Of a stretch of DNA of 64,000 nt, positions 30,165 to 62,174 are shown piece after piece (within the stretch, counting starts at the first letter, position 1; each line of letters opens with the position of its first letter). The notes under the pieces are model-generated. The model saw only the letters and a list, made by a program, of their open reading frames with translations, was not told the origin of the DNA and searched no databases. The DNA comes from Lepidodermella squamata (lineage: Eukaryota > Animalia > Gastrotricha), in contig JBLDXI010000024.1 in assembly GCA_047495785.1 (NCBI GenBank), positions 2,170,001-2,234,000 of the forward strand. The letters are read 5' to 3'. Both the position numbers and the translations under genes were made by a program.

Positions 30165-33100
30165 TTAGGAATTCATAGCTGTGAGCTCAGCGTCTTCAAT
30201 AGCTCGGCAAGCTATGTCGGCAGCCACACTTGGCAGCTCAATGGCGCTCGAGAGCGTTTTCTTGGTAACCTCAATATGCTCCTGGAATACTTGCATCATT
30301 TTGTTGACATGCGTCGTCAGTGGCATGACGTAATACTTGATCCCTTTGTCCTTTATCATCCTCAAAACATCCGACTCTTTCCTACCACATGGGCATCCAT
30401 CTGGGTGATCGTCACTGCCAGTGCCGAATTGGCGCCCATGAGGCGGGGCGTCTAGGATGTGAATCAAAACCTTGGCGCAACCCTCGCGCCAACTCAACAT
30501 AGCCGACCGTTCAAGACCATCTAACACAGCCTCGGCTCCATCCCCGCCCCCTTCAGCTCCAACCCCGCCAATAAACCGAATCACATCATCTGCATTGGTC
30601 AAATTAGTGCTCTGTAGTAGCTTTGCCCCATCGCAGTGGTCACGGTACGCAACCATTGCGAACTGCATGCAGGATGATGTCTTATCCAGTTCTTGAAGTT
30701 GAGGCATGGACGCCTCGATGATTCGTTTGATAGCGTTCTTACACTCCGTTATGTAGGAAGACATCGAGCCAGTTGCGTCAATGCAAAAGGCCATATCCAC
30801 TCCGATGAAATCCACCTTGTTGAAATCGTGACAGTCAAACTGATGCTCCTTAGCTATAAGGGAGTCAGAATGCCAGGCAGGCAGGTCGCAGAATTTCTTA
30901 TCCGACTCGCTGTGAGAGCCATGCGGGCAGTAGCAGTTGCATTTGTGGACATCCTCGTCGTCAGTTGGCATTGCCCAGTTTTGGTGGCTCCAGTAATCGC
31001 GGCACAAGTATTTGTCGTAAACAACGCCCAAGTTAGGGTAGAATCGTTCATCCTCATCGCAGTGAACGACCCCTGATCCCCAGAGCTCCTCGCCACACTC
31101 GTCTCCGCCTTTACATGGGATCAAATGGTAGTGAGCGCGGCCTTTGCGTTTGCACTGCTGGACGCAGGTTTCCGCGATCAGCATGTCGCCAGGCTCGTAA
31201 ACTTTTTTCACCTTCTTACCAGCTACAGTGTCTTCAACGGTGATAGACCCGTCGCTGGTCTTCGCGACACAGTAGCAAAACTCCATGTTGCGATGTGTGA
31301 CTGTCAGATGCTCCCCGTCGTGGCCCATCTTCTCGCGGCAGAAGCTGCCACACTGCGGACACTGCTCGCTACACTTGTGTTCTTTCAGGCAATTGTGCGG
31401 CTCATCATGAGTCCATTCGCCACTTGGCAGTACACGCTGACACGTGTTGATGTTGCGCTCCGGTCTGATGTAGATGTACTCCAACGGATTGCGAGGGTGT
31501 TCGAGATAACGTTCTTCCTCAACGTAGTGAACCTCGCAAATTCCGTCCATCTCACATTTAACCGGACAGTTGTGTGCCGTCTCGCAAAGATGCAGTTTGA
31601 TGGGGATGCCTTTGCCTTCAGGCCTAGGGTCTGGAATCATCATGGTGACATCGTCGTGATTATGCGGGCCAGTGCATGGATTGCCGCAAAAAATACACCG
31701 CCTTGGGCAGTGTGTCTCGTTACACCTGTGCAAGTCATGGCTTTCTGTCATTGATTTCGTGCAGGTGTTCGGGCAGTATTGGCACGGTGAAGTGCATTGA
31801 TGGCTCGACGAGCATTTGTGCCTTGCTGGGTTGATGTGATCCGCCGCATACGTGCAGGGGTTATCGCCGCAGATTTCACATAGGAAAGGGCAATCGTGTT
31901 GCTCTTTACTACATGTGTGACTGCCATCGTGACCGGCCGGGTTTTTGCAAGGCAGCGCTTCACCTTTACAAATGCTGCATCCCTCGTCGCATCGATGGTT
32001 CGTACCACAACCACACTCAAGAGTTCTCTCCAAGTCTTCGAGCTCTTTCTTCAGCGTCACGAATTCCTTATTCCGTTCGATTAACCCGGACAATGCGTAC
32101 ACCTCATTAGCCAAACGGGTTTCGTTGCCTTCGGCAGCTTTCAGTTCAAGTTCAATTGTTGAGGCATCCCTAGCAGTGGCATTTACACCAGACAATTGCA
32201 GTTTCACCTCATTCAAGTTCATCTTTATGGTAGCCAGGTCAGCTTGAACCGACTGGCAATTAGCGTCAATCTCTGCGATTAATTTGAATTCGGATAGATC
32301 AGCGAACAGTTTTTGGGAGTCGGTTTTCAAGTTCTGTAAAGCTGAACTCATCATTTCAAGCCGCATTTCAGCATCGTTGATGAATGCAAGTAGCTTTCCC
32401 GCCGAGGAACGTTTCTCCCTTAACACGGCGATTTCGGACTCGAGCCTCGTAATTTCGCTTTGGTTGGAGGCCTGCTTTGAGCAGACCACTGCTAGATCAG
32501 CCGCGCATTTCTGATGTGTTGCATTCAGCTCAGTTACCAGCACATGAATCCGTAGAAAATCATCACGTAACTTTGCTAGTCGGTTTTCCAGCAGCTTCAA
32601 CTCGGCCAGATTCGATTCGCGATCAGCATATGCAGCTTTCAATCTCTCCATCTCTTGCAGCATGCTTGCATCAGAAACGGGCCCAGCGTAAGGCCGTAAC
32701 TGCTCCTCTGCTTCCAGCTTCTTCTTTTCAACAAAATTCACTCTTTAATTAAAAGCGAGACCATGAAATAAGGTTCAAATAGAAACACATTTAATACTTA
32801 CTTTTCCTTGGCCGCAACAATCGCTGCTTCATCAACTGGCAAGCCGTCTTCATCAAAGCCGGTCTCCTCCATTTTCTTTACCTGCTGGGTGAACTTGGCC
32901 GTGAGCATGCTGAAGCGTTTAACAGCATCCTCGAGCTCCCTGATGTTTTCCGGAGAGGATTCAGCGGGAGGATCGGATCTAACGGGCAGAGCGGCCATTG
33001 ATGAAGTTTCAACGGTTCCAGCCATCGATTGATAGGTCTCGATCAATTGAGCCATTTGATCAATTGTGCCGAACTGCTTTTGACAAGTCTCCTCCTTATC

Positions 33101-36100
33101 TTTTCGTTCACGGACCTTCAACTCTGTTTCCGCACTTTCCGAATTCACCTTCGTCATCTCATCTCTGTTTGCCTGAAGAGAGTCATTGGCGGTATGAGAA
33201 AGGTTTTCCAAACGCGATCTCTCATCACCAAGGGCAATTGCTTCTTTTTTGCGAGCATCGAGGAGGCTTTCAGCTTCTCCCAAATTTGTATGTCCGCCGG
33301 AGCTATCCTTCTGCAAAGCTTTCAGTTCACCTTCAGCTGAACTCAGCAATGCCTCCATTACGACCAACTGAGACAAGCATTCCTGCCACTGCGCATATTC
33401 TGCTTTCAGTGCCTCAATAGAGGACGTTAGTGGCGAATCGCTGGAGCATTTTCGGATTTGTTCTTCGATGAATTCACAAACTTGACCAAGTTTTCTTTCA
33501 ATGGCAGCTGATTGCTCGTCTGCGTCACCCGACTCATCCATCGCATCGGCTGAGGGAGTGTCACGCGTCGGAAGAATCTGCGTAGTTCGGAATGCGGATG
33601 ACAATGCTGATGCAAGGGCCGCTTTCTTAGAGTTAAAAACTTCGAAAAATGATTTCGAATCGAGGGAAAGTCGAGTCTTAGAAATCAGTTCCTGTCGCTT
33701 TCCCTTAAAATTAGCCTCCTCGACTTCCTTTTCCGTAAGCAACTGTTGTAGACGGCCTTGTTGGGAGTGATATTCTTGCTTGGCTCTAACATCCGATAGC
33801 TCATTTTCCAGCGCAATTCGAGTCGCTTTCACAGTTTCATATTCCGTCTTGGTTAGTAGCAATTTTTGCTCGTAGCCACTTATGGCTGCCTGGTCCTCAG
33901 CGGCTAGACTAGCCTTCAGTTCCTGAAGCCGCTCTTGCTTCTCACGCCGATACTCCCCAGTAGCTTCTTTATGGCCTTTACGCTCGGCACATTTCAAAAA
34001 GCATGAATTGCACTTGTTCAAGCATAGAGAGAATCGACTTCCCAAAGCGCTAATTTTGCTTTGAATCCCAGTGTGAAAGGCCTTCTTTTCCTCCTGATTA
34101 AGAATCTGGTCAAGAGCAGCGAGCTCCTGAGCGGCGAAGGCCCTAACGATTTCCAGACGTTTGGTTGTGAAGTCAACCAAAAGGTCGTTGAACGAGCCCC
34201 ACATTTGATTGAAGTCAACCTTGCTAAACTTGGGATCTTGGTCGCTGAAGAGATGCTGCTTCAAGGCGGCAGTGATAGCTGAATACCCACCATCGTCAAC
34301 CTCACCCGGATAAACGAAAGCAACGCTACTCTGACTTATCTCAAGCTCTTCGTTTTCACTTTCCGGTTCTTCTTCACGCCCAGCGCGACTTTTGGGTCGC
34401 TTCGACTTCGAAGTTGAGACTTGCTCCGCTTTTGAAGTATCTCCCCATAGTGACAGGATGCGGCTCTCCGTTTGCATCATTTTGACACGTTTTATGTGCT
34501 CATCCCCAGCCTGCTCGTCGTCACGATTGACTTGGAGCATGACAACCTTCAATGATTGGAGCAGGGTCATCGAATCAGCCCAGCGATTCCTTTGCAGGCC
34601 AAGGTCCTCGTTGTTTTCATCGAAAAAGGACATGCGAAGGTCGTTCAGTTCGCCAACAAAAATGTCTCGGTTCGTGTAGTTGTTCAGACACTGGAAAACC
34701 AAGGCACCACTGAAAAGTCGCTTCAGAAAGTGATGGTCGCCTTTCTGATTCAACACTTGGATGTTGCGCTGGAATTCCTGCTGAGCTTTCTCACGCTCCT
34801 CTGACGCCACATCACGAACAGCCATCATCAGCAGGCCCTTGAAGTAGTTGTTACCCTTCACACGGTCAACGGCGCTGTTCAAATCACTGAAAAGACGATT
34901 CAGATACCGGTTGAAGTTCAAATCTTGGTTAAGGATGGTCACGTCACACACGGCTGCTAAAATGGTCAGCAGTTTGACTTCTTCCAGTTCATTACGACTG
35001 ATACTGAAAAGACCTTCGCAGTCAAGAATGACGAAATCCCGCTCAGCGCCATCGGACTCACGGACTAGCCTTGCGTAGCTCATCCATATTCCATCCGTAC
35101 ATCGCGTTGCAGCAACACTGAATCTCGTACCGAACAGCCGATTGAGCAGGTAGCTTTTACCAGAAGATTGCCGCCCGATGATACCGATGATTTTGACTGG
35201 GCGACCACCTGCCATGGATCCGAGCACACTTTCGAGATGACCGAGCGTAACGCGATCCGCCAGCTCAGCAATCTGACTTGCTTTTTCGGTGCCAAAGCGA
35301 TGTCGTTTCCCGTCGATCAGTGGCACCAAGTTGTTCTCCTCAATTGTGCAAATGTGAACAGGGACGCGTGTCAGAAGAATGCAGCCGAGTTGTTCATTCG
35401 TAATCGGCGATTCCTTCATCGCCACGGCATCGCAGGGTTTGATACCGACTGACAATTTGTAGGGGAAAGTTCTCAAATAACTCTCCAGTTGAGTTGGTTT
35501 GAAATTGGCATTCTCCTCCGGCAACACTAGGTCGTAGGAAATGTTTTCAGAGGAACCGATGAAATGGGCGATGGGACCATACTTCATGGAACTTGCGTAG
35601 ATAATGTCAACAACAGGGTTACCCCGAACTTTCTCACGCTTTACTTCGTCGCCCATAGCCTTGAGAGAAACGTCAGAAGCCAACCCTGGCAATATAGCAC
35701 TGTTGACTGATTTCGCCTCCATAATCGAGAGATAGATGTTTGCACTGTCGCAAAATAACTTCAAGCCCCACGATCGATCGCTTCTGAATGAATGGATGAT
35801 TTCGAAATTCATGTCATAAATATCGGTGTAGCTTTCATTTCGCATGATGAAGAATGACAGGTTTTTTGTCACATGGACGCTTTTGTAAAGCTCTCCATTT
35901 TTCGTGAGGAGCCGCTTCTTCACACTTTCGCGACCGGTATTGCTGCGATGGCACCACTCTTCTGCCTCCTTTGTCGTGAAGCTGTACAAATACAGATTAC
36001 CCCGTTCATTCAAAAGCAGAGCCTCGCGGCGGCCACCCATCATTGCCATAGAGACGATTCTACCATCCACTTTATTCGGAATGAGACTACTGCCTTTGCT

Positions 36101-37831
36101 GGTGTATTTCAAAGACTCATTTTCCGCTATCTCTTGAAGAGATAATGATTTCGATTCGTTATCGAGAACCGCAATCAAAACGGATGTAGTCGATTTATCG
36201 CCAGGTTCATAGGCCATCAGACAATCTCGAATATTCCAAACCGCGATTCGCTTGATCTCGCTGGCCGAAACTCGAACAAGAAGGGTATAAGGAAGCTTGT
36301 TGCTTCCTATGGCTACAATGAACAGTTTCCCATTCCACATCGGGTAGCATGAACGAACGAAACAAGTTCTCAGAATTTCAGTAATATCGTGAGAGACAGC
36401 AGGCTTTGGAGGCAGCAAGTCTCGCAAAATCTCCGGCGTGATTTGAACCGACCATGTTGAAGGGGCGAACGTAATAGCGTCGTACTCGCCTTCGTTTTTC
36501 TGAACAGCATTCACCATGCAAGGTATCAATTTGAGGGCTGTAGAACTGGTCCGTTTGGTCTGTGATGTATTGAAAATGACAGAGCATGCGTTTGAAAACG
36601 TGCTGATGGGCCGCGTTAATTCGCGACCTCTTCGATAAACAAGCTCCTCGAGGTTTTCTGCGCGAAGAATTTCCTCGATATCACGAAGCGCCTCATGGAC
36701 CTGTCCATACATGTTACGAGCGAAGAAATTCGCTATTTCGTCACTGAAATCCTTCGTAATAACACGGTAGTCGAAATTAAAGCGGTCTGTGCTGAAACTG
36801 TAGCTGTCAACAATTTTATAGGCCAGCTGTTCGGTCAAGAAGTCGACAAAGGCTGGGTAGTTCTTCTTCATGGTACCGTGCTTGTGCAAAAATGCATAAG
36901 GTCGATCGGCAAAATTGAGCCAAGTTGACTTTTTTTGCCGCAATGTATCCTCAATTCGAGGCAGCCATGATCCAAGCTCAAGAGAAAAAGATTTCCCGAC
37001 TTCGGCAAGGTCCTTGGCATATCGTTTATGCTCAACTGTGACTTTGTTAGCTATAGCATCGGTGGCTAAGTCACTGCCTAATCTTCGGACTTCAGAAGTT
37101 ACCGTAGGTGGGCTGTGATTCATCAGCCGGAGGAGTGAATATTTAAGGTCATGAACTTTCATGCCAATATCTTCTTTAGCCGGGCCTTTCGAGTCATCTA
37201 GGTCGGTGTAGAGAACATATCGGCTACCATTGTCGTTTAGCAAGAGCCCTCGTAGTGCGTGGTCTCCTAAATCCCGCGTCAGAAGCTCTGTCGAAGTGCT
37301 TACATTGATGACTTTAATCTCGTTGTTTTTGTGCTCTTCCAACCTGAACCTCGCCCTACCAACTACACTCGTGTCGACGAACGGATTTTTCGGCCCAGGG
37401 TAGAACTGGGAAATCCCTTCCGAGCCAAGGCAAAGAAAGATCGTCGGGGAAATATCTTCCAAGTAACGAAACAAGGTTACCAGAATGTTTTCCTTGTTGA
37501 AACTATCTTGCTTCAAGAATGACTCCTCAGCAACCAGAAGAAAGAGGATGTTATTATCTTTGACAGCGGCAAACAACTTTTTGTCAACATTATTGCCCGG
37601 AGGCAGGTCAAACTCAGGCTCAGCCAAGAGTTGCCTCGCCGTCGCAATCGCTTGATCACGCTGACCGAAACACGCTGCAACACTGCTGTTGTTGTTCATG
37701 GTAATCTGCAGATTTAGTTGATGCAAATCACGCAGATTGACGGCGACCTGCTCGATTGAAGCCATCTCAGCTGCGCCAGCTACTTCGCCGTAGAAAGGCG
37801 TATACAAGCGGCAGCGAGATGATGATGCCAT
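30165..37831 (-). CDS. Giant (2535 aa) GB1/RHD3/VLIG-type GTPase + coiled coil + Cys/His-rich zinc-binding repeats + C-terminal VWA domain; copy 1 (exons 37831-32802, 32742-30165)
   Basis: G1 GRQSSGKS, G2 RCTDGIW, G3 DCEG, and GBP-type G4 VRD. A long heptad region is followed by many C-x3-C-x2-C...H..C repeats and a VWA domain with DATGSM and GGGDGAEAV. A 59-bp phase-2 intron (AA|GTAAGT...TTAAAG|A) joins the two long ORFs in frame. Confidence 0.9.
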
Positions 37832-37876
37832 GAGTAAGCAAAAATTAGGTAAATACCTAAATGTAAAAGGAAACTT

Positions 37877-40830
37877 TTATAAAGTATAATCGAATATTCG
37901 TCGTCTTTTTAGCTGCTCATCCTCTGATTCAACTATCTGGGAGATGTCACTATTAGCAAAGCAAGCATTTAAAGCAAAGTTTTCTTGTGTCTTGCTGAGC
38001 ATGTTTCCACGATATAGTTGGATAATACCAATGTTCCTTTGGCTCTGAGAGCGGGTTCTGAATATCGGCAGTAACCGCATTTTTGTCCAATTTTCTCGCC
38101 ATGTCATTGAAGCCTCTATTGACAGCAATGTGAAGTGCAGTTTTATCTGAAGTTCGGCTATTATTCAATATCTGCACTTTGCACATCGAGTAGCACCAGC
38201 TCAAATCAAATTACTAACGTTCTTCCGCCGAACGGGTCGAGGTAATAGGCGGCGATATAGTGTTCACGGTACTGAAAACCTCACGACAGGCCACAATAAA
38301 TTTGTCGACAGGTACCTTTAACTTGCGACCCATATCGTAAACCAGTCCTTCTAGTCCTTCAGAACGAAGAAGTTCTTGGATGTCACTGTGAGCTACATGG
38401 ACCTGCCCATTCATGTTTTCAGTGAAGAAACTTGCCAGTTGGTCACTCAACATCTTTGCAACTACAATGAATTCGAAATTGAACTGGTCTGAGCTGATGC
38501 TGTAGCTGTTAATCACCGTCAAGGTCAATTCGTCAGCCAATTTGTTGACGATAGCTGGGTATTTATTTCTCATGGCGACTTGCTCGAGGATAAACATATA
38601 AGGCCGATCAAGCCAACAGCCATTAAAGCTTTGCTTTTGACCCCGCAATTTATCATCGATTCGAGGCAGCAAGGTCCCAAGATCCGTGGTAAACTTGACG
38701 CTGACACTTTCCAAATCTCTTGTGTACTTCTTATATGCTCAATGACGATGCCATTTACAAGGGATGCAGCCGATACCGTGATGATGTTGTTGACGTGGGC
38801 AACTATGGCCTCGACAGCAATGGAGCTATGCTTGCTTATCTTCAATAGTGATTCAATCAACGGGTTCACGATGGGGGCCATGTTGATATCAGGTTCCACC
38901 GGCACGATTTCTGCTGCTAAATAATACATACCAATTATTCCATACCATTTTTCGTCATCCTTGCCATTAACAATTAGGTATGGGACGAGAAAAGGAACTA
39001 ATTCATCAAACTCGAAAGATGAGGCTTTGGATAGCATTAGAGAAAAAATGACCAGGTCCAAAGCCTCATCTATGTTGGATGGGTAATGATTGGCTCGATT
39101 TTTTTCGGTAAAATCCCCATTTCAGATGAAACGTTGATAAGGGGTCGTTCATAAAGACTTTTTCCATTTTTTTCGACCCTACCCTACCTCTTGTGTTTCT
39201 TTCGAGCACCCCTTCTTTCTCTTGCTATTTAGATGGAACCCCCTCATCATTACCCTGAGAAACTTGGAAATTATTTTTTGACCTGCTGTGTGCGGCTTGA
39301 GAGTATATAGTCATTACTACAGCTGTTAGCCGCCAGCAGTCATTGCATGAGGACTCCTAGGTGTTTCCTTATTGGGCGCTGGGGAGCTGACAGCACTAAC
39401 TGATTGGTTCTGTATAACTACCAATCCTAGTGCTGACTCACGGGGACTTATTGACGTTCAATTAAACTCGCTCTCTGGTTGGTTGAAAGACACGGGAGCG
39501 GCAATGTTGGCGTGCGCAGACGCGAGGCTATTGGTTGCGTAACAGGATGCTGAGCGTGTGCGCAGCGCGGACTAATGCCACAGCTCAACAGCGCACTAAT
39601 GCTGTTGCAGCTGTGTACTGTGTCGTGCGTCGTGCGACTTGGTGAGTACCGAGTACCCCCTAGAAGCCGTTCTGTCCGAATTTCGAGACCCCACCTCCCA
39701 CCCCCTCCTCCCTCAAGTCTCGGACGTCTTTGGTGAACGATCCCTAATAACAACTGGAATTATCTCTATAGCTCACATTTGCCACGCAATTTAGGTTTCC
39801 TATTTCCTATCCCAATTTGTAGCTAGTGAGCAAAAGAAGCTACCTGGAATGACTGCTGGCGGGACTGGAGACGGTCTAGACTCTAAAACCATCTCCATGT
39901 TTTCCGTGCTGAATTCCAAATGAATGCAAATTTCATGGAACTTTGGTCTGTTTTCAGGTGACTGTTCCAAGCACATCGATATCATTGATGCCAACGCTTT
40001 GCAAAGCTTATTCTTCGGCAACGCACCCTCCTTCCCCTGGGAAATTCTAGGTTATTAATTAGTCGTATTACGTAACCTCAACTTACCGGGTACTCGAAAA
40101 AGGCTAAGCGAAACGCAACCACTCCAAAAGCCCAGACATCAGTCATTTCGGAGGGCCGGCGGCTTCTCTGTAGTTCAGGCGCTTGAAATCTGGCATCAAC
40201 CTGACCCACACTCATCCTAAACACTTCATTGCGAAAATTCGTAGATTAGTGATGAAAAGTGTCTCACAAGTGGAATGGCCTGAGTAAACCGAGTTTCAAT
40301 AGCTTATGAGCTTCATCGCAGAAATAGATAGTATCTGTCGTTATATTCCCGCTTATGAGTTTTTGCGAATGCAAGTATGATGCAGCTGATGCTAGTTGCG
40401 TTAGAAGTGACATTACTTCATCCACTGTCAGAGGCTCCTTGCTCTCTGCCTTCCTTACAACGTGCTGTTCGAGAGTCCCAAACGGGCAGAATTCACTTAT
40501 TAAGTGGTACTCTTCCGACATGGTTAATACTGAATTGAGTTTGACGATATGCTGATGCTCGAGGGTGGTGAGTATTTTTGAAGCCTGAAAAATTGCGAGT
40601 TACGAAATTAAATATTTCAAAACAAAAGCCTTTACGTCACTTAGCGCATCTTGAACGGATTTTTTTACTTGACTGCCGAGTTTTCGGCCGATTTTAGCGA
40701 TAGATATCGTTTTGAGAACCACATAACTTTCCGATTCGCCTTTTTGCTTAAGCAGGATTGTTGCGTTGACATCGCCCTGCTTTTTGAGTTCTCGAGCTGC
40801 TTCCAAACTATCAAAAGGAGCTGGCAGCAT
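37877..40830 (-). pseudogene. Disrupted pseudokinase + GTPase-N-like helical domain + ankyrin-fragment gene
   Basis: Kinase subdomains VVLKTI, HQHIVKL, LISEFCPFGTL, FQAPE, TDVWAFGV and CLEQSPENRPKF are present, but HRD is replaced by SGN and there is no DFG. The gene is interrupted by a MITE (39141-39744), a TGA (39122-39124) and a 2-nt frameshift (~38733). Ankyrin remnant DKTALHIAVNRGF. Confidence 0.75.
39141..39744. mobile_element. PIF/Harbinger-like MITE
   Basis: TIRs GGGGTCGTTCATAAAGAC / GTCTTTGGTGAACGATCCC with a TAA target-site duplication at 39138-39140 and 39745-39747. Confidence 0.8.
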
Positions 40831-42278: not shown

Positions 42279-43184
42279 GGACGATACTTCTTTCCGCAGC
42301 AATTTTTTTCTTTTCGCAGCAAATTTGTTCTTTCCGCAGCAATTTATTTTTCTCGTAGTATCGCTTTATTTTCGCAGCAAATGAACGTTTTTTCCGCAGC
42401 AGTTTATTTTTATTTGCTAAAATGAGAAAAGAACGGGGAATATAAATATTAGTAAACGAAAATGAAAATCTAGGACGGCTTAGAGCCTTGAAATATCCTC
42501 ATACCATAATATACCAATTCGTTCAAAGTCCCCGATTTTAAGACCCAGCATCTAACCCTAACCTAACCCTAACCCTAACCCTAACCAGTTGAATAACCGA
42601 CTAAACTGGTTAGGTATTGAATTAAATGAAATTTCGTACCGCATTAAGATTTGCCCAACGAGAAACATTGTGGGGCTATTTCTTAAAGGTTTTTGGGGCA
42701 TTTCTTCACGGGATACATGTACATGTACGGAGACATACGGGATACATATACGGGGTACATGTGGTAAGATACATTTGACCCTCGAGCCTTCGCTGCCTCC
42801 CGTAGGAAGAGCTTACAATTGTTGATGGAGGCGGCATAAATATATCATATATTTTAGTAATTGATGGCAGTTAGTCAAGTCGCGATGTTTAAAATGTGAA
42901 AAACAATTTGTTAACGACCTTAAGCCGTCGTTCCACTCGCTCAAGTCGCGTCAAATTTTGGGCGCGTGCTCGCTACAGTCACCTGGCGTGATTTTAAATA
43001 TTGAATAGCCTTAATATAGTTCGGTGGCTATATTATTTCAATTAGTTATTCAATTAGCATTTACTGCGGAAAAAACGTTGATTTGCTGCAAAAAGAAAGT
43101 GATACTGCGAGAAAAAAAATTGCTGCGGAAAGAACAAATTTGCTGCGAAAAGAAAAAAATTGCTGCGGATTAAAGTATTTTTCC
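42279..43184. mobile_element. Non-autonomous DNA transposon with ~120-bp modular TIRs and an internal (CTAACC)n tract
   Basis: Left arm of repeated TT(C/T)CGCAGCAA units is mirrored by TTGCTGCG(G/A)AA units on the right. The element is flanked by a CATTATC (or CCATTATC) direct repeat. Confidence 0.8.
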
Positions 43185-44938: not shown

Positions 44939-45081
44939 CTGATAGCTAGGTATTCAGAATTATTATTAGAATGATGCTATAGTCTCCACTTTTCGAAAAC
45001 TGAAGAAGGATATAATCGATCCCAAGGGTCTATTTTCTTCAATTTTAACCTTTTTGCATTTAGTGTGTAAATAATTGTTTG

Positions 45082-49140: not shown

Positions 49141-49484
49141 TGTCCAGTGTGGTATACGGTTATAACCACGGTTTTAACTAGCCGGTTGTAACCGAGTTTT
49201 AACCGGTCATTTCAGAATTCGTTTTAGCCAACTGTGTTTTAACCTCCCTAAATTCACAGCTAATTTTGATTTGAAAACTTGAATTTGAATTTTGAATTTC
49301 GATCGCCATGTTGATCGGCTTTTATAAATCCAGCATAATACGTGGCAGATTTCAACACCAGCAGTGGACCCCGGCGAAAATCTTAATGAGAAAGGAGAGT
49401 CTGTTTGCTCACGATGGTCTTCTCGCATCTGGTCTCGCACCATGTTCCGTTCGGCGTGACACTGGCGATGTCGCGTGCCAAGCA

Positions 49485-50010
49485 TCACTTCATTCCTGGC
49501 CATTGCTCAAAGTCGCTATGATGACATTGCCGTTCGACATGTTCTGCCTCTGCGCGATGACGTCGAATGCGTTCGTCTCTTCCCGTCGCCGCCCCTGAAG
49601 TCACCAGTGTTTCTACCGAATTCTCGTCTGCCACAGGGCCAGCTTCCCGCTCCCATGGAATTCTTGTCATCTGTGTCTATTCTGCTTTCTGCCTTCCGTC
49701 AGTCTTCTCCAGCCCCTCTCACACTACTGTGGTTCTAAACCTTTCGCCGTCTCCTACCTCGCTGTGTCTGTCAAGTTCCTCTTTGTCGTCCCTTTTCCTA
49801 ATTTGTCTGATAAATCTCCCGTTTCGTAATAAATTCTTCCATTTGCATCCTCAATAGTGCCGTCTGTGGCAATCAACTGTTCACCCTCTGCTCTTTTCCA
49901 ATTAATAACGATTTTTTATTTTACCTTTGATATGTTAATGTTGGTTGCCTCTAAATTAGTGATAGAAAAATGGCGCCAGCAGGAAAGAGAAGGACAATGA
50001 AAAATCTTTT
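49485..50010. repeat. Dispersed repeat, copy 2 (similar to 43880-44370)
   Basis: See copy 1. Confidence 0.65.
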
Positions 50011-53500: not shown

Positions 53501-55616
53501 CCTCCATAATCGACAGATAGATGTTCGCGCTGTCACAAAATAACTTCAAGCCCCACGATCGATCGCTTCGGAAGGAATGGATGATTTCGAAATTCAGGTC
53601 GTAAATATCAGTGTAGCTTTCATTTCGCATGGCGAAGAATGACAGGTTTTTTGTCACGTGGACGCTTTTGTAGAGCTCCTTATTTTGCGAGAGGAGCCGT
53701 TTCTTCACGCTTTCACGACCGGTATTGCTGCGATGGCACCACTCTTCTGCTTCCTTTGTCGTGAAGTTGTACAGATACAGATTACCTCGATCATTCAAAA
53801 GCAGGGCCTCGCGGCGACCGCCCATCATTGCCATGGAGACGATTTTACCATCCACGTTATTCGGAATAGGACTACTGCCTTTGCTCGTGTATTTTAAAGA
53901 CTCATTTTCTGCTATCTCTTGGAGAGATATTAACTTTGATTCGTTATCGAGAACCGCAATCAAAACGGATGTAGTCGATTTATCGCCAGGTTCATATGCC
54001 ATAAGACAATCTCGAATATTCCAAACAGTGATTCGCTTGATCTCGCTGGCCGAAATTCGAAGAAGGAGGGTATAGGGCAGCTTGTTGCTTCCTATGGCTA
54101 CAATGAAGAGTTTCCCATTCCACATCGGGTAGCTTGAACGAACGAAACAAGTTCTCAGAATTTCAGTTATGTCGTAAGAGACAACAGGCTTTGAAGGTAG
54201 CAAGTCTCGCAAAATCTCAGGCGTGATTTGAACCGACCACGTGGACGGGGCGAATGTGATAGCGTCGGACTCGCCTTTGTTCTTCTGAACAGCATTCACC
54301 ATGCAAGGTATCAATTTGAGGGCTGTAGAACTGGTCCGTTTGGTCTGTGATGTATTGAAAATGACAGAGCATGCGTTTGAAAACGTGCTGATGGGCCGCG
54401 TTAATTCGCGACTTCTGCGATAAACAAGCTCCTCGAGGTTTTCTGCGCGAAGTATTTCCTCGATATCACGAAATGCCTCGTCGACCTGTCCATACATGTT
54501 ACGAGTGAAGAAATTGGCTATTTCGTCACTGAAATCCTTCGTAATAACACGGTAGTCGAAATTAAAGCGGTCTGCGCTGAAACTGTAGCTGTCAACAATT
54601 TTATAGGCCAGCTGTTCGGTCAAGAAGTCGACAAAGGCTGGATAGTTCTTCTTCATGGTACCGTGCTTGTGCAAAAATGCATAAGGTCGATCGGCAAAAT
54701 TGAGCCAAGTTGACTTTTTTTGCCGCAATGTATCCTCAATTCGAGGCAGCCATGATCCAAGCTCAAGAGAAAAAGATTTCCCGACTTCGGCAAGGTCCTT
54801 GGCATATCGTTTATGCTCAACTGTGACTTTGTTAGCTATAGCATCGGTGGCTAAGTCACTGCCTAATCTTCGGACTTCAGAAGTTACCGTAGGTGGGCTG
54901 TGATACATCAGCCGGAGGAGTGAATATTTAAGGTCATGAACTTTCATGCCAATATCTTCCTTAGCCGGACCTTTCGACTCGTCCATCTCGTGGTAGAGAA
55001 CATAACGGCTGCCATTATCGTTTAGCAAGAGGCCTCGTAGTGCGTGGTCTCCCAAATCCCGCGTCAACAGCTCTGTTGAAGTGCTCACAGTGATGACTTT
55101 GATGTCGTTGTTTTTGTGCTCTTCTAGCCTGAACCTCGCCCTACCAGCTACACTCGTGTCGATGAACGGATTTTTCGGCCCAGGATAAAACTGAGTAATC
55201 CCTTCTGAACCAGGGCAAAGAAATATCGACGGGGAAATATCTTCCAAGTAACGAAACAAGGTTACCAGAATGTTTTCCTTGTTGAAACTATCTTGCTTCA
55301 AGAATGACTCCTCAGCAACAAGAAGAAAGAGGATGCTGCTATCTTTGATAGCGGCGAACAACTTTTTGTCAGCATTCTTGCCCGTTGGGAGGTCAAACTC
55401 AGGCTCAGCCAAGAGTTGCCTCGCCGTCGCAATCACTTGATCACGCTGACCGAAACACGCTGCAACACTGCCGTTGTTGTTCATGGTAATCTGCAGATGT
55501 AGTTGATGCAAATCACGCAGACTGACGGCGACCTGCTCAATCGAAGCCATCTCAGCCGCGCCCGCTACTTCGCCGTAGAAAGGCGTGTACAAGCGGCATC
55601 GAGATGGCAATGCCAT
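50571..55616 (-). CDS. Giant GTPase-Cys/His-VWA gene, copy 2 (1681 aa, intronless, coiled coil deleted, MIDAS Asp lost)
   Basis: Highly similar to copy 1 over the N-terminus and GTPase. The junction ...GSDSGELPECSFSHQC skips the coiled-coil region in frame. The VWA domain reads CIAATGSM. Confidence 0.88.
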   Translation of the reverse strand: MALPSRCRLYTPFYGEVAGAAEMASIEQVAVSLRDLHQLHLQITMNNNGSVAACFGQRDQVIATARQLLAEPEFDLPTGKNADKKLFAAIKDSSILFLLVAEESFLKQDSFNKENILVTLFRYLEDISPSIFLCPGSEGITQFYPGPKNPFIDTSVAGRARFRLEEHKNNDIKVITVSTSTELLTRDLGDHALRGLLLNDNGSRYVLYHEMDESKGPAKEDIGMKVHDLKYSLLRLMYHSPPTVTSEVRRLGSDLATDAIANKVTVEHKRYAKDLAEVGKSFSLELGSWLPRIEDTLRQKKSTWLNFADRPYAFLHKHGTMKKNYPAFVDFLTEQLAYKIVDSYSFSADRFNFDYRVITKDFSDEIANFFTRNMYGQVDEAFRDIEEILRAENLEELVYRRSRELTRPISTFSNACSVIFNTSQTKRTSSTALKLIPCMVNAVQKNKGESDAITFAPSTWSVQITPEILRDLLPSKPVVSYDITEILRTCFVRSSYPMWNGKLFIVAIGSNKLPYTLLLRISASEIKRITVWNIRDCLMAYEPGDKSTTSVLIAVLDNESKLISLQEIAENESLKYTSKGSSPIPNNVDGKIVSMAMMGGRREALLLNDRGNLYLYNFTTKEAEEWCHRSNTGRESVKKRLLSQNKELYKSVHVTKNLSFFAMRNESYTDIYDLNFEIIHSFRSDRSWGLKLFCDSANIYLSIMEAKSVKSFILPGLASDVSLKAMGDEVKREKVRGNPVVDIIYASSMKYGPIAHFIGSSENISYDLVLPEENASFKPTQLESYLRTFPYKLSVGIKPCDAVAMKESPITNEQLSCILLTRVPVHICTIEENNLVPLIDGKRHRFGTEKASQITELADRVTLGHLESVLGSMAGGRPIKIIGIIGRQSSGKSYLLNRLFGTRFSVAATRCTDGIWMSYARLVRESDGAERDFVILDCEGLFSISRNELEEVKLLTILAAVCDVTILNQDLNFNRYLNHLFSDYNSAVDRVKGKNYFKGLLMTAVRDVEPYEQERAQQDFQRNIQALNQKGDHHFLKRLFSGALVFRCLNRYTNQAFVSELNDLRMLLLDENDEDLGLQKNRWADSMTLLQLLKVAMLQVILDDKQAGDEHINRVKMMQTESRSLCGGKEKQTSKSMSKRQKSSASLEEEPGSDSGELPECSFSHQCTSPCKYCPNTCTKSMTESHDLHACNETYCPRRCIFCGGPCTGLHDHEDIAMTIPDPRAESRGAPVKMHLCKKEHICPVKCERDGICEVLYTEETRYLDPPRNSLEYIYIRQEHNINMCQRVLPSGEWTHDESHDCLKEHKCIEQCLQCGSFCREKIGHDGKHRAFHRNIDKKTTVVEYDSFEETCALQCQRKGRAHYHLIPCKGGEECDEKLRASGVRHCDEKDPNLAVVYDKYLCRDYWSHQNWAVPTDDEDIHKCNCYCPHGSHSESDKKFCDLPAWHSDSVIAKEHQFECHDFNKVDFIGVDMVFCIAATGSMLPYIVECKNAIKRIIEAFMLQLPELDKTSSCMQFAIVAYRDHCDGPKLLQSTNLTNADEVIRFIDGVGAHGGGDGAEAVLDGLERAARLSWREGCAKVLIHILDAPPHGRQFGSGGDDHPDGCPCGRTESDVLRMIKDKGIKYYVMPLTTHVNKMVQVFQEHIDVTKITLSSAIELPSAAADIHCRAIEDAELTAMNS

Positions 55617-55839
55617 GAGTAAGCTCAAGATTTAAATTTCTAAACTTGAAATGCAACGTTTTTTGATAAATGATGCAGCTTATAGGATCTAGCGTGATAT
55701 TGTACTGCAATTCCAGTTTTATGATGAATCGCTCTTTTCAGTTTATATTACTTTTCGATGTTGGCTACAAGAATTGAAACCGTTTTGAAATTTTGGCTAT
55801 TTTAAAATTGGTAGGTAACCGAGGTGCGAAAAGTGACTC

Positions 55840-56378
55840 ACAGATGAACTGGCCTGAGTAAGCCGAGTTTCACTTGGGTATGAGCAGAAATATATCGGTC
55901 GTGATATTCCCGCTAATGAATTTTCGCGAATGTAAGTATGCTGCAGCTGATGCAATTTGCGTTAGAAGGGAGAGGACTTTACAACGTGCTCTGCCTACAT
56001 TACAACGTGCTGTTCGAGGGTCCCAGAATTCACTCAAAAAGTGATATTCTTCCATTATCGCGAATACGGAATTAAGCTTCACAGTATATATTGATGCTCG
56101 ATGGTAGCGAGCGATTTAGAAGCCTGAAAAATTGGTTTTAAAATAAAAGTATTCACAACAAAGGCATTTACGTCATTTAACGGCACTTGAACTTATTTTT
56201 TGCTTGGCTGTTGATTTTTCGGCCGATTTCAGCGATTTTAGCAATGGTTCGTTTCAAGAACCATGTTACATGTCCCTTTCGATTCGCCTTTTTGTTTGAG
56301 GAGGATTGTTGCGTTGACATCGCCCTGCTTTTTGAGTACTCGAGCTGTTTCGAAACTATCAAAAGGAGCTGGCAGCAT
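55840..56378 (-). pseudogene. Second, more degraded and truncated copy of the pseudokinase gene
   Basis: MLPAPFDSFETARVLKKQGDVNATILLKQKGES and LLTQIASAAAYLHSRKFISGNITTD match 40264-40830, with frameshifts. The upstream flank is also similar (56380-56840 vs 40830-41290). Confidence 0.8.
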
Positions 56379-56920: not shown

Positions 56921-57081
56921 GAATAACCTCGATTTAGGCTTGTTTACTTCCACTTCAAGAAGATAGCTGGCAAGTCAAAATTCCTGTTGTTTTTGTCCCT
57001 TCATTCACGTTAAAAAGCCGGTTTTTACTTGTCACCCGTGACCTTGAAAAGGATGCAAACAAGCCTAAATCCGAGTTATTC
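56921..57081. mobile_element. ~160-bp MITE; a diverged inverted copy lies at 58816-58982
   Basis: Ends GAATAACCTCGATTTAGGCTTGTTT / AAACAAGCCTAAATCCGAGTTATTC. The internal ATTCACGTTAAAAA is present in reverse orientation in the second copy. Confidence 0.7.
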
Positions 57082-57094
57082 AACGTCACTAACG

Positions 57095-57197
57095 ATATCG
57101 TTCGTGGCGCGGAAGAATCAATACTTCAAGCAAAAAACGTAGTGCTAGATAGCATTTTTTGCTTGAAGTGCTGGTTCTTCCGCGCCACGAACGATAT
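57095..57197. repeat. Near-perfect ~100-nt hairpin
   Basis: ATATCGTTCGTGGCGCGGAAGAA..ACTTCAAGCAAAAAA ... TTTTTTGCTTGAAGT..TTCTTCCGCGCCACGAACGATAT. Confidence 0.8.
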
Positions 57198-58519
57198 GGC
57201 AGGGGATTAACTCATTGTCCTCGATCCTGGAGTGAGAAACTGAACTAATTACAAATCGATCTATCACATAAATCGCTGGCGCCAGCGCTTCAATTATCGG
57301 TTACAGCGCCAACATCCAGAAAATAGCGAACCAATTGCGCGGCCAGGGATATAACGTCACTGAAAAAAGATATTGTGTAGCTAGCAACGGCTCTTCTCGA
57401 CGCTTTGATATCCTGCTGGCCCTGCGAAACGAGAATAATTATTGATCCCGCACTATCAAATGCAAGTCTTCGGAAAACGCGCAATATTAGCCGTTAAAAT
57501 ATCTTCGCCATAGACACGCAGCCGCACCCTAGCCCTGCCTTGACAAGGCTATTGCGCAATTAAGGCTATGCAGCTTGGTGGTAGATTTACCCAGAGTAGA
57601 TTGTAAATGGCTGTGCATTTCTACGGAGCGGTATTATGTATCCCAAATAGATGAAACTTTTCAAACCTTTCGAATTCTCCGCAACGGTGAGGACAAATGG
57701 GCACTCGTTTTAAGGTACAGTGCTACCTCCATAAATGCAACCTTCATAAAAAGAAAACCTCCGTATTTCAATTATTTTTCATCAAACTAAAATTTTTAGT
57801 TTGATAATTTTTATTTACTGTGAAAAAACAGGCGTCGTTAGCAACAAAATTTCAGCGCTGCGGGCGGATTTCTCGCTTTTAAAATTGGCGGCCGCGCGGT
57901 TGTTTCTCGCCGAACACCCAACTTCTCGATCTTTAAAAATCGTTGTTTTTTATAAGCTCATTGAGATTGCGAATCAACAAAATCGTGCGCACGCGATTTT
58001 TCGAGTTTTTGCTTTTACAAATTCTACAACCCATTCAAATCAACAAATTTGACTGAATTCGTTCCGGGTTATTTAAAAATATGGCTAACCACTAAAATCA
58101 TCGTCGCCTTAGAAACTAAGATAAAAACTTAGCGACGCACTTATGATTCATCGCTAGCTATTTAACAGCCCTCTATAAATGCAACCCTCCGTAAAAGCTA
58201 ACGCGTGTCTCCCGACCCTTTGCATGTGTGGAGGTCGTACTGTAATTTCATTGGCTACAAGGGGTTGTTGACTATGCCAAAAGCTCGTTTGATCTGCGTT
58301 TGGTTGGCATCGGCGGCATAATACTGTGCGAAAGTGAAAGGTGTCAGAAACTATGCAGAAATAACAGCTCTTACCGTAGCACATCTACGGTGATCACTTT
58401 CAGCAATAAGAATCAGTCGACAACTCCAAATGTCTTGACTTTTATTCAGTCATATTCAGGGTAAGCTTTGAGCTTTGGGTACGTATTACCTGCTTTGTCA
58501 CCAATCGACATTAGATACA

Positions 58520-58766
58520 CACCAGAAAAAAAATCACCCTAATTTGGGTGATAAGAAATCGGACTTTTAGCTTGTGAAACCCCCTCAATTAGGGCCCTGT
58601 GAGTATCCTAATTCACGGATTTTCAACATTTATCTGATTTCATGCCCAAAATCACCCTAATTCATGTAGAAAAATTCAGTTCTTTATCTGCGAAAAGCAT
58701 GAATTCAGATACCGAAACTAAATTCATGCTTTCGGTAGATGAATTAGGGTGTTATTTTTTCTGGTG
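58520..58766. mobile_element. CMC/EnSpm-like (CAC-terminated) MITE
   Basis: TIRs CACCAGAAAAAAAATCACCCTAATT / AATTAGGGTGTTATTTTTTCTGGTG with a 2-bp CA direct repeat. Confidence 0.7.
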
Positions 58767-59596
58767 CAGTATAAAATATCTGGTTGTGCTTCATTGATGG
58801 ATATAGTTCATCTTTGAAATACTCGGATTTAGGCTTTTTCATTTCCGTTTGAAGGTGGCGGGACAGAAGTAAGAAGCACGGTTTTTTAACGTGAATGAGA
58901 ATGCAAAAACAAAAGACGCTTTACTTGTAGCCTCCGGCCTTCAAACTGATGTAGACAACCGTAAATCCGAGCCGAGTTATTCAACAATATTGGCGAAAGG
59001 CGAATTTCCTTAGCTGTCCTCGATAAGAACCGGAAACATGTATCGCTGTTATATATGGCGCCGAAAAAACATCAATGTTTTTCAATTGCGTCAATGCAAA
59101 ATGCTTCAATGCGTCAATGCTACTCCGATAAATCCACCTTGTTGAAATCGTGACAATCAAACTGATGCTCCTTAGCTATAACGGAGTCCGAATGCCAGGC
59201 AGGCAGGTCGCAGAATTTCTTATCCGACTCACTCTGATACCATCGCGAATTTCAGACAAATTTTATTCCTCGTGGTTAGAGAGATAATGAAATATTGCGA
59301 GGCAAATACAATATTGTCCGTATTTGTTAACATCTTTACTTTAAGCTCAATTCCGGATCCCCTTAGATTCTTGGCTTATTGCCAGACTTGGCTTATTGAG
59401 AGAACAACTGCACCCTGTTGGTCTCAAAAGATCTTATTCTTCACCCGACTTAGGACAGGGTGACCTAACTTCCATTCAAGCTCGTCAAATTGACGGTTAT
59501 GATCTCCACTTGCAAGCAAAAAACTAAAGGGGATTCGGAATTGAGCTTACATGAATGCTATTTTTCATTTGTTCATCTTTTTCATTGTTCTGTTAA

Positions 59597-62174
59597 CTAG
59601 GAAATCATAGCTGTGAGCTCAGCGTCTTCAATAGCTCGGCAATGTATATCGGCAGCCGCACTTGGCAGCTCAATAGCGCTAGAGAGCGTTATCTTGGTGA
59701 CGTCAATATGCTCCTGGAATACTTGCACCATTTTGTTGACATGCGTCGTCAGTGGCATGACGTAATACTTGATCCCTTTGTCCTTTATCATCCTCAAAAC
59801 ATCCGACTCTGTCCTACCACATGGACATCCATCTGGGTGATCGTCACCGCCAGAGCCGAATTGGCGCCCATGAGGCGGGGCATCTAGGATGTGAATCAAA
59901 ACCTTGGCGCAACCCTCGCGCCAGCTCAACCTAGCCGCCCGTTCAAGACCATCTAACACAGCCTCGGCTCCATCCCCACCCCCGTGAGCTCCAACCCCGT
60001 CGATGAACCGAATCACTTCATCTGCATTGGTCAAATTAGTGCTCTGTAGCAGCTTTGGCCCATCGCAGTGGTCACGGTACGCAACAATTGCGAACTGCAT
60101 GCAGGATGATGTCTTATCCAGTTCTGGAAGTTGAAGCATGAAAGCCTCGATGATTCGCTTGATAGCGTTTTTACACTCGACTATGTAGGGAAGCATCGAG
60201 CCAGTTGCGGCAATGCAAAAGACCATATCCACTCCGATGAAATCCACCTTGTTGAAATCGTGACATTCAAACTGATGCTCCTTAGCTATAACGGAGTCCG
60301 AATGCCAGGCAGGCAGGTCGCAGAATTTCTTATCCGACTCGCTGTGAGAGCCATGCGGGCAGTAGCAATTGCATTTATGGATATCCTCGTCGTCAGTTGG
60401 CACCGCCCAGTTTTGGTGGCTCCAGTAATCGCGGCACAGGTATTTGTCGTAAACAACGTCCAAGTTAGGGTAGAATCGTTCATCCTCATCGCAGTGAACG
60501 ACCCCTGATCCCCAGAGCTCCTCGCCACACTCGTCTCCGCCTTTACATGGGATCAAATGGTAGTGAGCGCGGCCTTTGCGTTTGCACTGCTGGACGCAGG
60601 TTTCCGCGATCAGCATGTCGCCAGGTTCGTAAACCTTGTTCACTTTCTTGCCAGCCACAGTGTCTTCAACGGTGATAGAACCGTCGCTGGTCTTCGCGAC
60701 ACAGTAGCAAAACTCCATGTAGCGATGTGTGACTGTCAGATGATCACCGCCGTGGCCGATTTTCTCGCGGCAGAAGCTGCCACATTGCAGGCACTGTTCG
60801 ATGCACTTGTGTTCCTTCAAGCAGTCATGCGACTCATCGTGGGTCCATTCGCCACTTGGCAGTACACGCTGACACATGTTGATATTGTGCTCCTGTCTGA
60901 TGTAGATGTACTCCAACGGATTTCGAGGGTGTTCGAGATAACGTTCTTCCTCAATGTAGCGAACCTCGCAAATTCCGTCCATCTCACATTTAACCGGGCA
61001 GTTGTGTGCCGTCTCGCAAAGATGCAGTTTGATAGGGGCTCCTCGACTCTTAGCCCTAGGGTCTGGAATCATCATGGTGACATCGTCGTGATCGTGCGGG
61101 CCAGTGCATGGGCTACCGCAGAAAATACACCGCTCTGGGCAGTGGGTCTCGTTACACCTGTGCAAATCGTGGCTTTCTGTCCAAGATTTTATGCAGGTGT
61201 TCGGGCAGTACTGGCACGATGAAGTGCATTGATGGCTCGACGAGCATTTGTGCATTTTTGGGTTGATGTGATCCACCGGGTACGTACAGACATTTACGAC
61301 GCAGATTTCACATAGGAAAGGGCAATCGTGTTGCTCTTTACTACATGTGTGACTGCCATCGTGACCGGCCGGGTTTTTGCAAGGCAGCGCTTCACCTTTA
61401 CAAATGCTGCATCCCTCGTCGCATCGATGGTTCGTACCACAACCACACTCAAGAGTTCGCTCTAAGTCTTCGAGCTCTTTCTTCAGCATCACGAATTCCT
61501 TATTCCGTTCGATTAGCCCGATCAATGCGTACACCTCATTAGCCAAACGGATTTCGTTGCCTTCGGCAGCTTTCAGTTCAAGTTCAATTGTTGAAGCATC
61601 CCTAGCTGTGGCATTCAGACCGGACAACTGCTGTTTCACCTCATGCAAGTTCATCTTTATGATAGCCAGGTCAGCTTGAACCGACTGCCAATTAGCGTCA
61701 ATCTCTACGATTGATTTGAATTCGGATAGATCAGCGAACAGTTTCTGAGAGTCTGTTTTCAAGTTCCGTAAAGCCGCACTAATCCTCGACATCCGCATTT
61801 CAGCATCGTTGATGAATGCAAGTAGCTTTCCCGCCGAGAAACTGTTCTCCCTTAACACGGCGATTTCGGACTCGAGCCTCGTAATTTCGCTTTGGTTGGA
61901 GGCCTGCTTTGAGCAGACCACTGCTAGATCAGCCGCGCATTTCTGATGTGTTGCATTCAGCTCAGTTCCCAGCAGATGAATCCGTAGAAAATCATCACGT
62001 AACTTTGCTAGTCGGTTTTCCAGCAGCTTCAACTCGGCCAGATTCGATTCGCGATCAGCATATGCTGCTTTCAATCTCTCCATCTCTTGCAGCATGCTTG
62101 CATCAGAAACGGGCCCAGCGAAAGCCCGTAACTGCTCCTCTGCTTGCAGCTTCTTCGTTTCAGCCAAATTCGCC
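59597..62174 (-). CDS. Giant GTPase-family gene, copy 3: terminal exon only (coiled coil + Cys/His repeats + VWA); the upstream exon is not in the window
   Basis: Same acceptor position and phase as copy 1 (TTAAAG|G GCG AAT TTG) and an 856-aa open frame. Sequence 5' of the acceptor is replaced by repeat DNA. Confidence 0.8.

What the first reader, a model, noticed from the sequence alone, without database searches (positions are those of the whole stretch)
30165..62174. Tandemly amplified pseudokinase + giant GTPase-zinc-VWA module: candidate undescribed defence/signalling system
Seen in the sequence: a unit of [pseudokinase gene] followed head-to-tail by [giant G-domain/Cys-His/VWA gene] occurs twice (30.1-41.3 kb, 50.5-56.8 kb), and a third GTPase-family copy starts at 59.6 kb. 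The copies show deletion, mosaicism and TE insertions. Established knowledge: GB1/RHD3-superfamily GTPases (GBP, VLIG/GVIN) are cell-autonomous immunity proteins, and birth-and-death tandem arrays are typical of immune loci. Inference: this is a coupled sensor/effector pair, with a very large GTPase bearing a VWA target-binding domain and a catalytically dead kinase adaptor. I do not recognise this pairing as a described animal system.
Basis: partly seen in the sequence, partly recalled or inferred. Interest (0 to 1): 0.85.

Follow-up and report, generated by a model that had tools for sequence, protein, structure and literature searches.

The report
Giant GTPase array with decaying pseudokinases
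A small animal carries repeated copies of a giant, probably protist-derived GTP-switch protein, each next to a dead-kinase gene that once picked up a piece of that protein; the repeats are real, but the kinase copies are decaying while the giant protein is kept, so a working partnership is possible but not shown.

Summary
The repeat is real. Copy A encodes an intact 2535-aa protein (one 59-nt intron). Copy B lost about 820 codons in frame. Copy C is a last exon running off the window. Folding suggests the order: N-terminal GBP-like fold with no P-loop (new; moderate support), helical bundle, propeller, intact GB1/RHD3 G domain and stalk, coiled coil, Cys/His array, VWA. The family is unstudied but occurs in ciliates, bdelloids and conifers. 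The window copies group with a compost-metagenome sequence, not with rotifers (AU p=0.00055). The upstream gene is a true pseudokinase that captured the GTPase's first helical bundle (47% identity, dN/dS 0.34). Coupling is not supported. Kinase A is frameshifted. Kinase B is destroyed, while GTPase B shows purifying selection (0.19). No foreign locus tested has such a neighbour, and no positive selection was seen. Best reading: birth-and-death co-duplication of an independently acting, probably defensive GTPase and a locally born chimeric neighbour (0.55); a non-obligate regulator or decoy is possible (0.22). The scan noted this GTPase family and the shared domain before, elsewhere in this genome.

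The parts
30165..37831 (-). Giant GTPase copy A, intact, 2535 aa; exons 37831-32802 and 32742-30165, 59-nt phase-2 intron
37346..37822 (-). N-terminal domain (aa 4-162) with a GB1/RHD3-like G fold but no P-loop: predicted pseudo-GTPase, conserved in ciliate and rotifer homologues
   Evidence: AlphaFold pLDDT 70-95 over aa 1-140; best matches hGBP2 Z 7.5, GBP1 7.2, atlastin-1 7.1, RNF112 6.7, SMG8/9 6.4; 0 of 27 rows with GxxxxGK[ST]; sequence register consistent but not significant; Foldseek not significant
36557..37183 (-). Helical bundle (aa ~217-425) after the pseudo-G domain; the segment copied into the kinase gene
   Evidence: (low pLDDT)
35681..36388 (-). Beta-propeller-like domain (aa ~482-717)
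   Evidence: Z 13-15 to propeller proteins
34511..35380 (-). Active-looking GB1/RHD3 G domain (aa ~818-1107): G1 GRQSSGKS, G2 RCT, G3 DCEG, G4 RD
   Evidence: E 4e-11; Sey1 Z 21.0, GBP1 19.8, atlastin 19.8
34037..34291 (-). Three-helix stalk of the active G domain (aa ~1181-1265), followed by a half zinc motif (aa 1270-1287) and a ~630-aa coiled coil
   Evidence: Cryptomeria homologue runs straight across without the coiled coil
30828..32015 (-). Cys/His array, about 44 Cys and 32 His in ~400 aa; probable zinc-binding repeats
   Evidence: no solved relative
30207..30800 (-). VWA domain; MIDAS-type DxTGS intact in copy A
39844..40830 (-). Pseudokinase A exons 1-4 (40830-40636, 40584-40268, 40216-40087, 40036-39844): no Gly loop, HRD to SGN, DFG to LLR; beta-3 Lys, APE, DVW and NRP kept
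38219..39069 (-). Pseudokinase A exon 5: captured copy of the GTPase helical bundle, with a frameshift near 38735
37956..38146 (-). Putative last exon of kinase A (after a predicted 72-nt intron): single ankyrin-repeat remnant ending ~125 nt before the GTPase start
   Evidence: (Ank E 0.008); splicing inferred
50571..55616 (-). Giant GTPase copy B, open 1681-aa frame; in-frame loss of ~820 codons plus the intron (junction near 52140) removes stalk, coiled coil and first zinc modules; MIDAS Asp replaced by Ala
55841..56378 (-). Pseudokinase B wreck: exons 1-2 only, 10 indels (7 frameshifting), 2 stops; ends ~225 nt before the GTPase B start; ~500 nt of 5' flank still homologous to unit A
59597..62174 (-). 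Giant GTPase copy C, last exon (859 codons, acceptor intact, MIDAS Asp replaced by Ala); intron runs past the window end
59083..59237 (-). Decayed 155-nt fragment of a further GTPase copy (zinc array/VWA boundary)
56921..58971 (.). Nested inverted-repeat (DNA-transposon-like) insertions between copy C and kinase B
42284..43178 (.). MITE-like element with 67-nt terminal inverted repeats and a short CTAACC run, between units A and B

Best explanation
A birth-and-death tandem array in which a two-gene block was copied together. The working part is the giant GTPase, a member of an unstudied protist-type GB1/RHD3 family probably acquired by horizontal transfer, separately from bdelloid rotifers. 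Most likely mechanism (inferred from GBP1, atlastin and GVIN1, not shown): the VWA/MIDAS end and the propeller bind a target surface. GTP binding dimerises the central G domains, and the P-loop-less N-terminal G fold serves as a scaffold or second pairing surface. The protein then polymerises on the target, with a zinc-clamped coiled-coil arm holding the Cys/His array and VWA away from the motor. A defence role is about even odds; membrane remodelling is the alternative. The upstream gene is a locally born chimera: a pseudokinase-ankyrin gene that captured the GTPase's first helical bundle, was kept by selection for a long time, rode along in the duplications, and is now decaying. The GTPase does not depend on it.
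For: Shown: domain order and intact G motifs. Full-length homologues in ciliates, rotifers, Anaeramoeba and conifers. Sister to compost contig P0001 at 100/99 support; window-plus-rotifer clade rejected, p-AU 0.00055. Intron position differs from Rotaria, and P0001 has none. Similar neutral divergence of GTPase, kinase intron and flank (0.21-0.24). GTPase A vs B dN/dS 0.185 over 1135 codons, while kinase B is destroyed. No pseudokinase upstream at 7 annotated foreign loci or in 10 flanking ORFs of 6 more. The family also forms tandem pairs in Adineta, without a kinase. Captured domain has no outside match. Literature: GVIN1 has two predicted large-GTPase domains joined by a helical linker and coats bacteria (10.1101/2025.03.24.645074).
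Against: The captured bundle stayed open and constrained (dS 1.2, dN 0.41; chance of no stop under neutrality 0.002-0.02), which needs a function, and binding the GTPase is the obvious one. Kinase A vs B dN/dS is 0.33 (bootstrap 0.20-0.55), so selection acted on the kinase after the duplication on at least one branch. GTPase B's constraint may predate its own deletion, so B may now be dying along with its kinase. Kinase A's single frameshift could be an assembly error. Unchecked notes report several expressed kinase-immune GTPase fusions in this genome.
Confidence: 0.55

Rival explanations
1. Non-obligate coupled pair. The pseudokinase uses its captured helical bundle to co-assemble with the giant GTPase (homotypic stalk contact), acting as adaptor, inhibitor or decoy, with ankyrin repeats as the variable binding part.
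For: Captured piece ends exactly at the helical-domain boundary. Long purifying selection on it. Kinase fold residues kept while catalytic ones are lost. Stalk contacts drive assembly in GBP and atlastin (established knowledge). A third kinase-GTPase unit is reported beyond the window (s1-422681, unchecked).
Against: No intact kinase copy in the window. GTPase B is constrained beside a destroyed kinase. All units come from one array. No conservation outside. No interaction or expression data.
Confidence: 0.22
2. Shared transcription unit. The kinase gene travels with the GTPase because its 5' region is the GTPase's promoter, or the two form one spliced or trans-spliced message; the kinase protein itself is dispensable.
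For: Only ~125 nt (A) and ~225 nt (B) separate the genes. The flanks of A and B differ beyond ~50 nt of the ATG, yet both keep an acceptor-like TTTAG 23-25 nt upstream. Kinase B keeps its 5' flank and splice sites despite coding decay.
Against: 5' flank divergence (0.21) is no lower than the neutral level. Does not explain selection on the captured domain. No RNA evidence.
Confidence: 0.12
3. Part of the pattern is an assembly artefact: the B/C identical tract, the B deletion or the kinase A frameshift come from chimeric amplification, haplotype mixing or indel errors.
For: B and C are 100% identical over ~750 nt. The frameshift sits in a short AT run. Reads could not be checked.
Against: A, B and C differ by 7-10% over most of their length with codon-structured changes. 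B has its own diverged sequence at the junction and private in-frame deletions. Flanks and insertions differ between units.
Confidence: 0.08

Closest known systems
Human GVIN1 / VLIG and URGCP very large GTPases
   Same: Best Pfam hit is URGCP_GTPase; similar size; two large-GTPase folds joined by a helical linker (GVIN1 AlphaFold model, 10.1101/2025.03.24.645074); weak direct hits (E 1e-4).
   Different: Score below the Pfam cut-off (51-53 vs 55 bits). Very long branch in the tree. GVIN hits carry none of the VWA Pfam labels, and no propeller or Cys/His array is described for GVIN1. No kinase partner described.
GBP1/2, atlastin, Sey1/RHD3, RNF112 (GB1/RHD3 superfamily)
   Same: G-domain fold, DxEG G3, RD G4, following three-helix stalk. 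GBP genes also expand in clusters (PMC6400534).
   Different: No transmembrane anchor or CaaX seen at the C-terminus; about four times larger; extra pseudo-G, propeller, zinc array and VWA domains.
Unnamed 'VLIG-type G domain / VWFA domain-containing protein' family of ciliates, bdelloid rotifers, Anaeramoeba and Cryptomeria
   Same: Same full-length domain order; 31-43% identity to P0001 along the whole protein; tandem copies in Adineta and, by locus tags, Tetrahymena.
   Different: No pseudokinase neighbour found there; the window copies form a separate lineage from rotifer copies. No paper on the family was found.
SMG8-SMG9 G-domain pair
   Same: Both G folds of the giant protein match SMG8/9 structurally; it is a precedent for a G-fold pair regulating a kinase (own knowledge).
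   Different: Separate chains and an active PIKK kinase; no sequence evidence of orthology.
JAK JH2-type pseudokinases; pseudokinase-ankyrin genes of this genome
   Same: Degenerate catalytic loop (SGN vs HGN) with fold residues kept; JAK and TYK2 are top PDB sequence hits.
   Different: Fused to a captured GTPase helical bundle; subfamily (TKL, NEK or other) not resolved here.
Paired plant NLRs with integrated decoy domains (own knowledge)
   Same: Adjacent genes, one carrying a domain captured from another protein.
   Different: No NLR domains; head-to-tail, not head-to-head; the captured domain comes from the neighbour itself; the pair is not co-maintained.

Membership tests
GB1/RHD3 GTPase superfamily | Large G-domain fold with G1 GxxxxGKS, G3 DxEG and G4 RD | tested here: met
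GB1/RHD3 GTPase superfamily | Helical stalk after the G domain | tested here: met
   copy A; deleted in copy B
GB1/RHD3 GTPase superfamily | GTP hydrolysis and nucleotide-driven dimer or polymer formation | not testable with these tools
   needs biochemistry
GVIN/VLIG/URGCP family | URGCP_GTPase profile above gathering score and grouping with GVIN | tested here: not met
   51.2 and 52.9 bits vs cut-off 55; GVIN rows on a long separate branch
GVIN/VLIG/URGCP family | Two large-GTPase folds in one chain | tested here: inconclusive
   N-terminal fold matches GBP, atlastin and SMG8/9 in the top 7 rows, but Z is only 6.3-7.5; Foldseek and hhalign not significant
GVIN/VLIG/URGCP family | Infection-inducible expression and coating of microbes | not testable with these tools
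Protist/rotifer G-Cys/His-VWA family (unnamed) | Full-length colinear homology: N-domain, propeller, G domain, Cys/His array, VWA | tested here: met
Protist/rotifer G-Cys/His-VWA family (unnamed) | MIDAS-type DxT[GS]S motif in the VWA domain | tested here: met
   copy A has DATGS; Asp in 50 of 51 homologue motifs; lost in B and C
Pseudokinase | Kinase fold with loss of catalytic HRD and DFG | tested here: met
Coupled sensor/effector gene pair | Both partners intact and co-maintained in each unit | tested here: not met
   kinase A frameshifted, kinase B destroyed; GTPase A intact, GTPase B constrained
Coupled sensor/effector gene pair | Adjacency conserved in independent lineages | tested here: not met
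   none at foreign loci; no close relative of this animal was available, and the BLAST part of the test is insensitive
Coupled sensor/effector gene pair | Diversifying selection on recognition surfaces | tested here: inconclusive
   pairwise windows mostly 0.08-0.6, VWA windows 0.4-0.8, conversion obscures the signal; only three copies
Coupled sensor/effector gene pair | Physical interaction or co-induction | not testable with these tools
   needs experiments or RNA

The most novel reading that the evidence does not exclude
An animal acquired a giant double-G-fold GTPase from a protist and then evolved its own regulator for it: a pseudokinase-ankyrin protein that captured the GTPase's stalk-like bundle and uses it to dock onto, restrain or target the GTPase in an intracellular defence system.
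Probability: 0.2. Interest if true: 0.78.

Novelty: new variant of a known kind. Interest (0 to 1): 0.5.

Why it matters
GVIN1 was only recently shown to coat bacteria, and the deeper origins of very large GB1/RHD3 GTPases are unstudied. This family gives an intact, nearly intronless, clonable relative with a predicted dead G fold, a propeller, a zinc array and a VWA end. It appears to have entered two microscopic animal lineages separately and to expand in arrays in both. The kinase chimera is a clear case of a new gene built from its neighbour and held by selection. If it binds the GTPase, it would show how a host adds a regulator to a foreign gene; if not, it is a warning that repeated adjacency in a tandem array is not evidence of a system.

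Tried and rejected
Searches for the captured helical domain found nothing outside this genome: word-indexed search (length-limited), full phmmer (four hits, all to the N-terminal domain), Atlas, local HMM (P0001 E 0.07 only). Kinase exon 2 found no homologue (the length limit makes this uninformative). tblastn for kinase neighbours in 55 foreign loci was blank, but the control failed: active kinases do not detect the window pseudokinase by BLAST, so I rely on the Pfam annotations. Two active kinases near homologues (Paramecium L005, convergent; L045, two genes downstream) are separate genes and look incidental. Kinase-GTPase fusion by splicing was considered: the acceptor-like site before ATG A is in frame only with the donor after kinase exon 2, which would cut the kinase in half, B has an in-frame stop there, and homologues start at the same ATG; rejected. 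Copy C as a mere remnant was dropped after seeing its intact acceptor and note s1-422931. Prokaryotic origin: one MAG contig only. GC3 shows no foreign signature. hhalign did not support homology of the first 55 aa of kinase exon 5; the next 55 aa do match (1 of 2000 shuffles). Literature searches found no paper on this family or pairing.
Full report
Setting. The window is from an animal with short introns. Earlier scan notes suggest a gastrotrich (s1-384322) or a rotifer (s1-421468); I did not test this. All genes of the finding lie on the minus strand. 

Observation. Self-comparison confirms two kinase-GTPase units and a third GTPase copy. Copy A has two exons and a 59-nt GT-AG intron and gives 2535 aa. 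Copy B is one open frame of 1681 aa that has lost about 820 codons and the intron. Copy C is the last exon only, with its acceptor intact and its intron running off the window; an unchecked note places the first exon in the next window (s1-422931). B and C are identical over about 750 nt covering the VWA domain and share the loss of the MIDAS aspartate, which A and 50 of 51 homologue motifs keep. A 155-nt fragment of a fourth copy and several inverted-repeat insertions lie between units.

The giant protein. Pfam gives a URGCP/RHD3/GBP-like G domain and a VWA domain. A model of aa 471-1300 (mean pLDDT 78) shows a propeller, a G domain matching Sey1, GBP1 and atlastin at Z 20-21, and a three-helix stalk. 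G1 to G4 are intact in A and B. A half zinc motif precedes a ~630-aa coiled coil, and the Cys/His array follows it; a conifer homologue runs straight across without the coil, so the coil looks like an insertion into a zinc module (inference). A model of aa 1-460 shows a confident N-terminal domain whose seven best matches among 48,161 chains are all GBP, atlastin, RNF112 or SMG8/9 G domains (Z 6.3-7.5). Its P-loop is reduced to one glycine in every homologue aligned. Sequence-profile and Foldseek scores are not significant, so 'pseudo-GTPase' has moderate support. It implies a duplicated G-fold plus helical bundle design, like the two large-GTPase domains predicted for GVIN1 (10.1101/2025.03.24.645074). 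The deletion in B removes the active domain's stalk, the coil and the first zinc modules.

Origin. The family is widespread in ciliates and also present in bdelloids, Anaeramoeba and Cryptomeria, and is essentially absent from prokaryotic genomes. The window copies are sister to P0001 from a compost metagenome (100/99). That contig is gene-dense and looks protist-like to me (inference). Forcing the window copies together with rotifer copies is rejected (p-AU 0.00055). The single introns of the window and Rotaria genes are at different places, and P0001 has none. A transfer separate from the bdelloid one is the simplest reading, but the tree is unrooted and invertebrate sampling is thin.

The kinase. 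Kinase A has four clean exons with a kinase fold but no Gly loop, HRD or DFG. Exon 5 carries a copy of GTPase residues about 217-425, the helical bundle after the pseudo-G fold, ending at its boundary with the propeller. Over 154 codons identity is 47%, dS 1.2, dN 0.41; neutral decay would leave the frame open with probability 0.002-0.02. Ciliate and rotifer homologues have a diverged helical segment at the same position, so the GTPase is the likely donor. A frameshift near 38735 breaks exon 5, and only one ankyrin remnant follows. Kinase B stops after exon 2 and has 10 indels and 2 stops. Kinase A vs B dN/dS is 0.33 (0.20-0.55), so the kinase was under selection on at least one branch after the duplication.

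Is it a coupled pair? For: the retained captured domain, close spacing, and unchecked notes of a third unit and of expressed kinase-GIMAP and kinase-IRG fusions elsewhere in this genome. Against: neutral divergence of GTPase, kinase intron and flank is similar (0.21-0.24; kinase exon 2 is higher at 0.56), which fits one block duplication. GTPase A vs B shows dN/dS 0.185 while kinase B is wrecked, although that constraint may predate B's own deletion. No kinase copy in the window is intact. No pseudokinase lies upstream at seven annotated foreign loci or among ten flanking ORFs of six more, and Adineta has a tandem GTPase pair without one. The captured domain has no outside match. Unchecked notes describe two other loci of this GTPase family without mentioning a kinase partner, many pseudokinase-ankyrin genes without the GTPase, and a parallel co-duplicated NmrA-pseudokinase block. 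No positive selection was seen.

Verdict. Best reading: an independently acting, probably transferred giant GB1/RHD3 GTPase in a turning-over array, with a locally born and now decaying chimeric neighbour (0.55). Rivals: non-obligate regulator or decoy (0.22), shared promoter (0.12), partial artefact (0.08). The target-coating mechanism and the defence role are inferred from GBP1 and GVIN1, not shown. The scan had noted this GTPase family on two other pieces of this genome and the shared domain in the next window. New here are the family-wide pseudo-G fold, the identity of the captured piece, the selection contrast in unit B and the test against a shared origin with rotifers. No paper on the family or the pairing was found.

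Noticed in passing
window 46454-48158 (+): Cys-rich three-finger-like start, several hydrophobic segments, then an ankyrin ORF (Ank_2 E 6e-34), lying between units A and B; possibly one fusion gene (also note s1-394253).
   Followed up: partly
window 43914-44196 and 49493-49819: A 71-83% identical duplicated stretch on both sides of the 45-48 kb gene; no long ORF recognised.
   Followed up: partly
window ~48700-49300 (+): Broken fragment resembling the end of a non-LTR retrotransposon reverse transcriptase, judged by eye from the translation.
   Followed up: no
window 27288-29446: Element with 63-nt terminal inverted repeats and Tc1/IS630-like transposase ORFs, just downstream of GTPase A (also note s1-394154).
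   Followed up: no
window 5793-6968, 8315-11284, 11449-12378 (-): Tandem family of secreted Thr/Ala-rich mucin-like genes with hydrophobic C-termini; one has five 89-aa repeats rich in Trp motifs.
   Followed up: no
window 37857-37861 and 55640-55644 (-): Acceptor-like TTTAG 23-25 nt upstream of both GTPase start codons, although the flanks differ further upstream; possible 5'-UTR intron or trans-splice site.
   Followed up: partly
window 44615-44938: Near-perfect nested inverted repeat (86-nt arms, 99%), probably a young MITE.
   Followed up: no
L045:6300-7691 (+): Active kinase-RING gene two genes downstream of a homologous GTPase in a freshwater metagenome contig; separate gene, probably incidental.
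   Followed up: partly
L046:3-2015 (-): A dynamin-family gene next to a homologous giant GTPase.
   Followed up: no
L002:1-17752: Adineta steineri also has a tandem pair of these GTPase-VWA genes, with no kinase between them.
   Followed up: yes
window 13639-14334, 15664-16248, 18980-19438, 23779-24729: Ordinary animal neighbours: ankyrin gene, three-finger/Ly6-like gene, WASP-like exon, trypsin-like protease.
   Followed up: no
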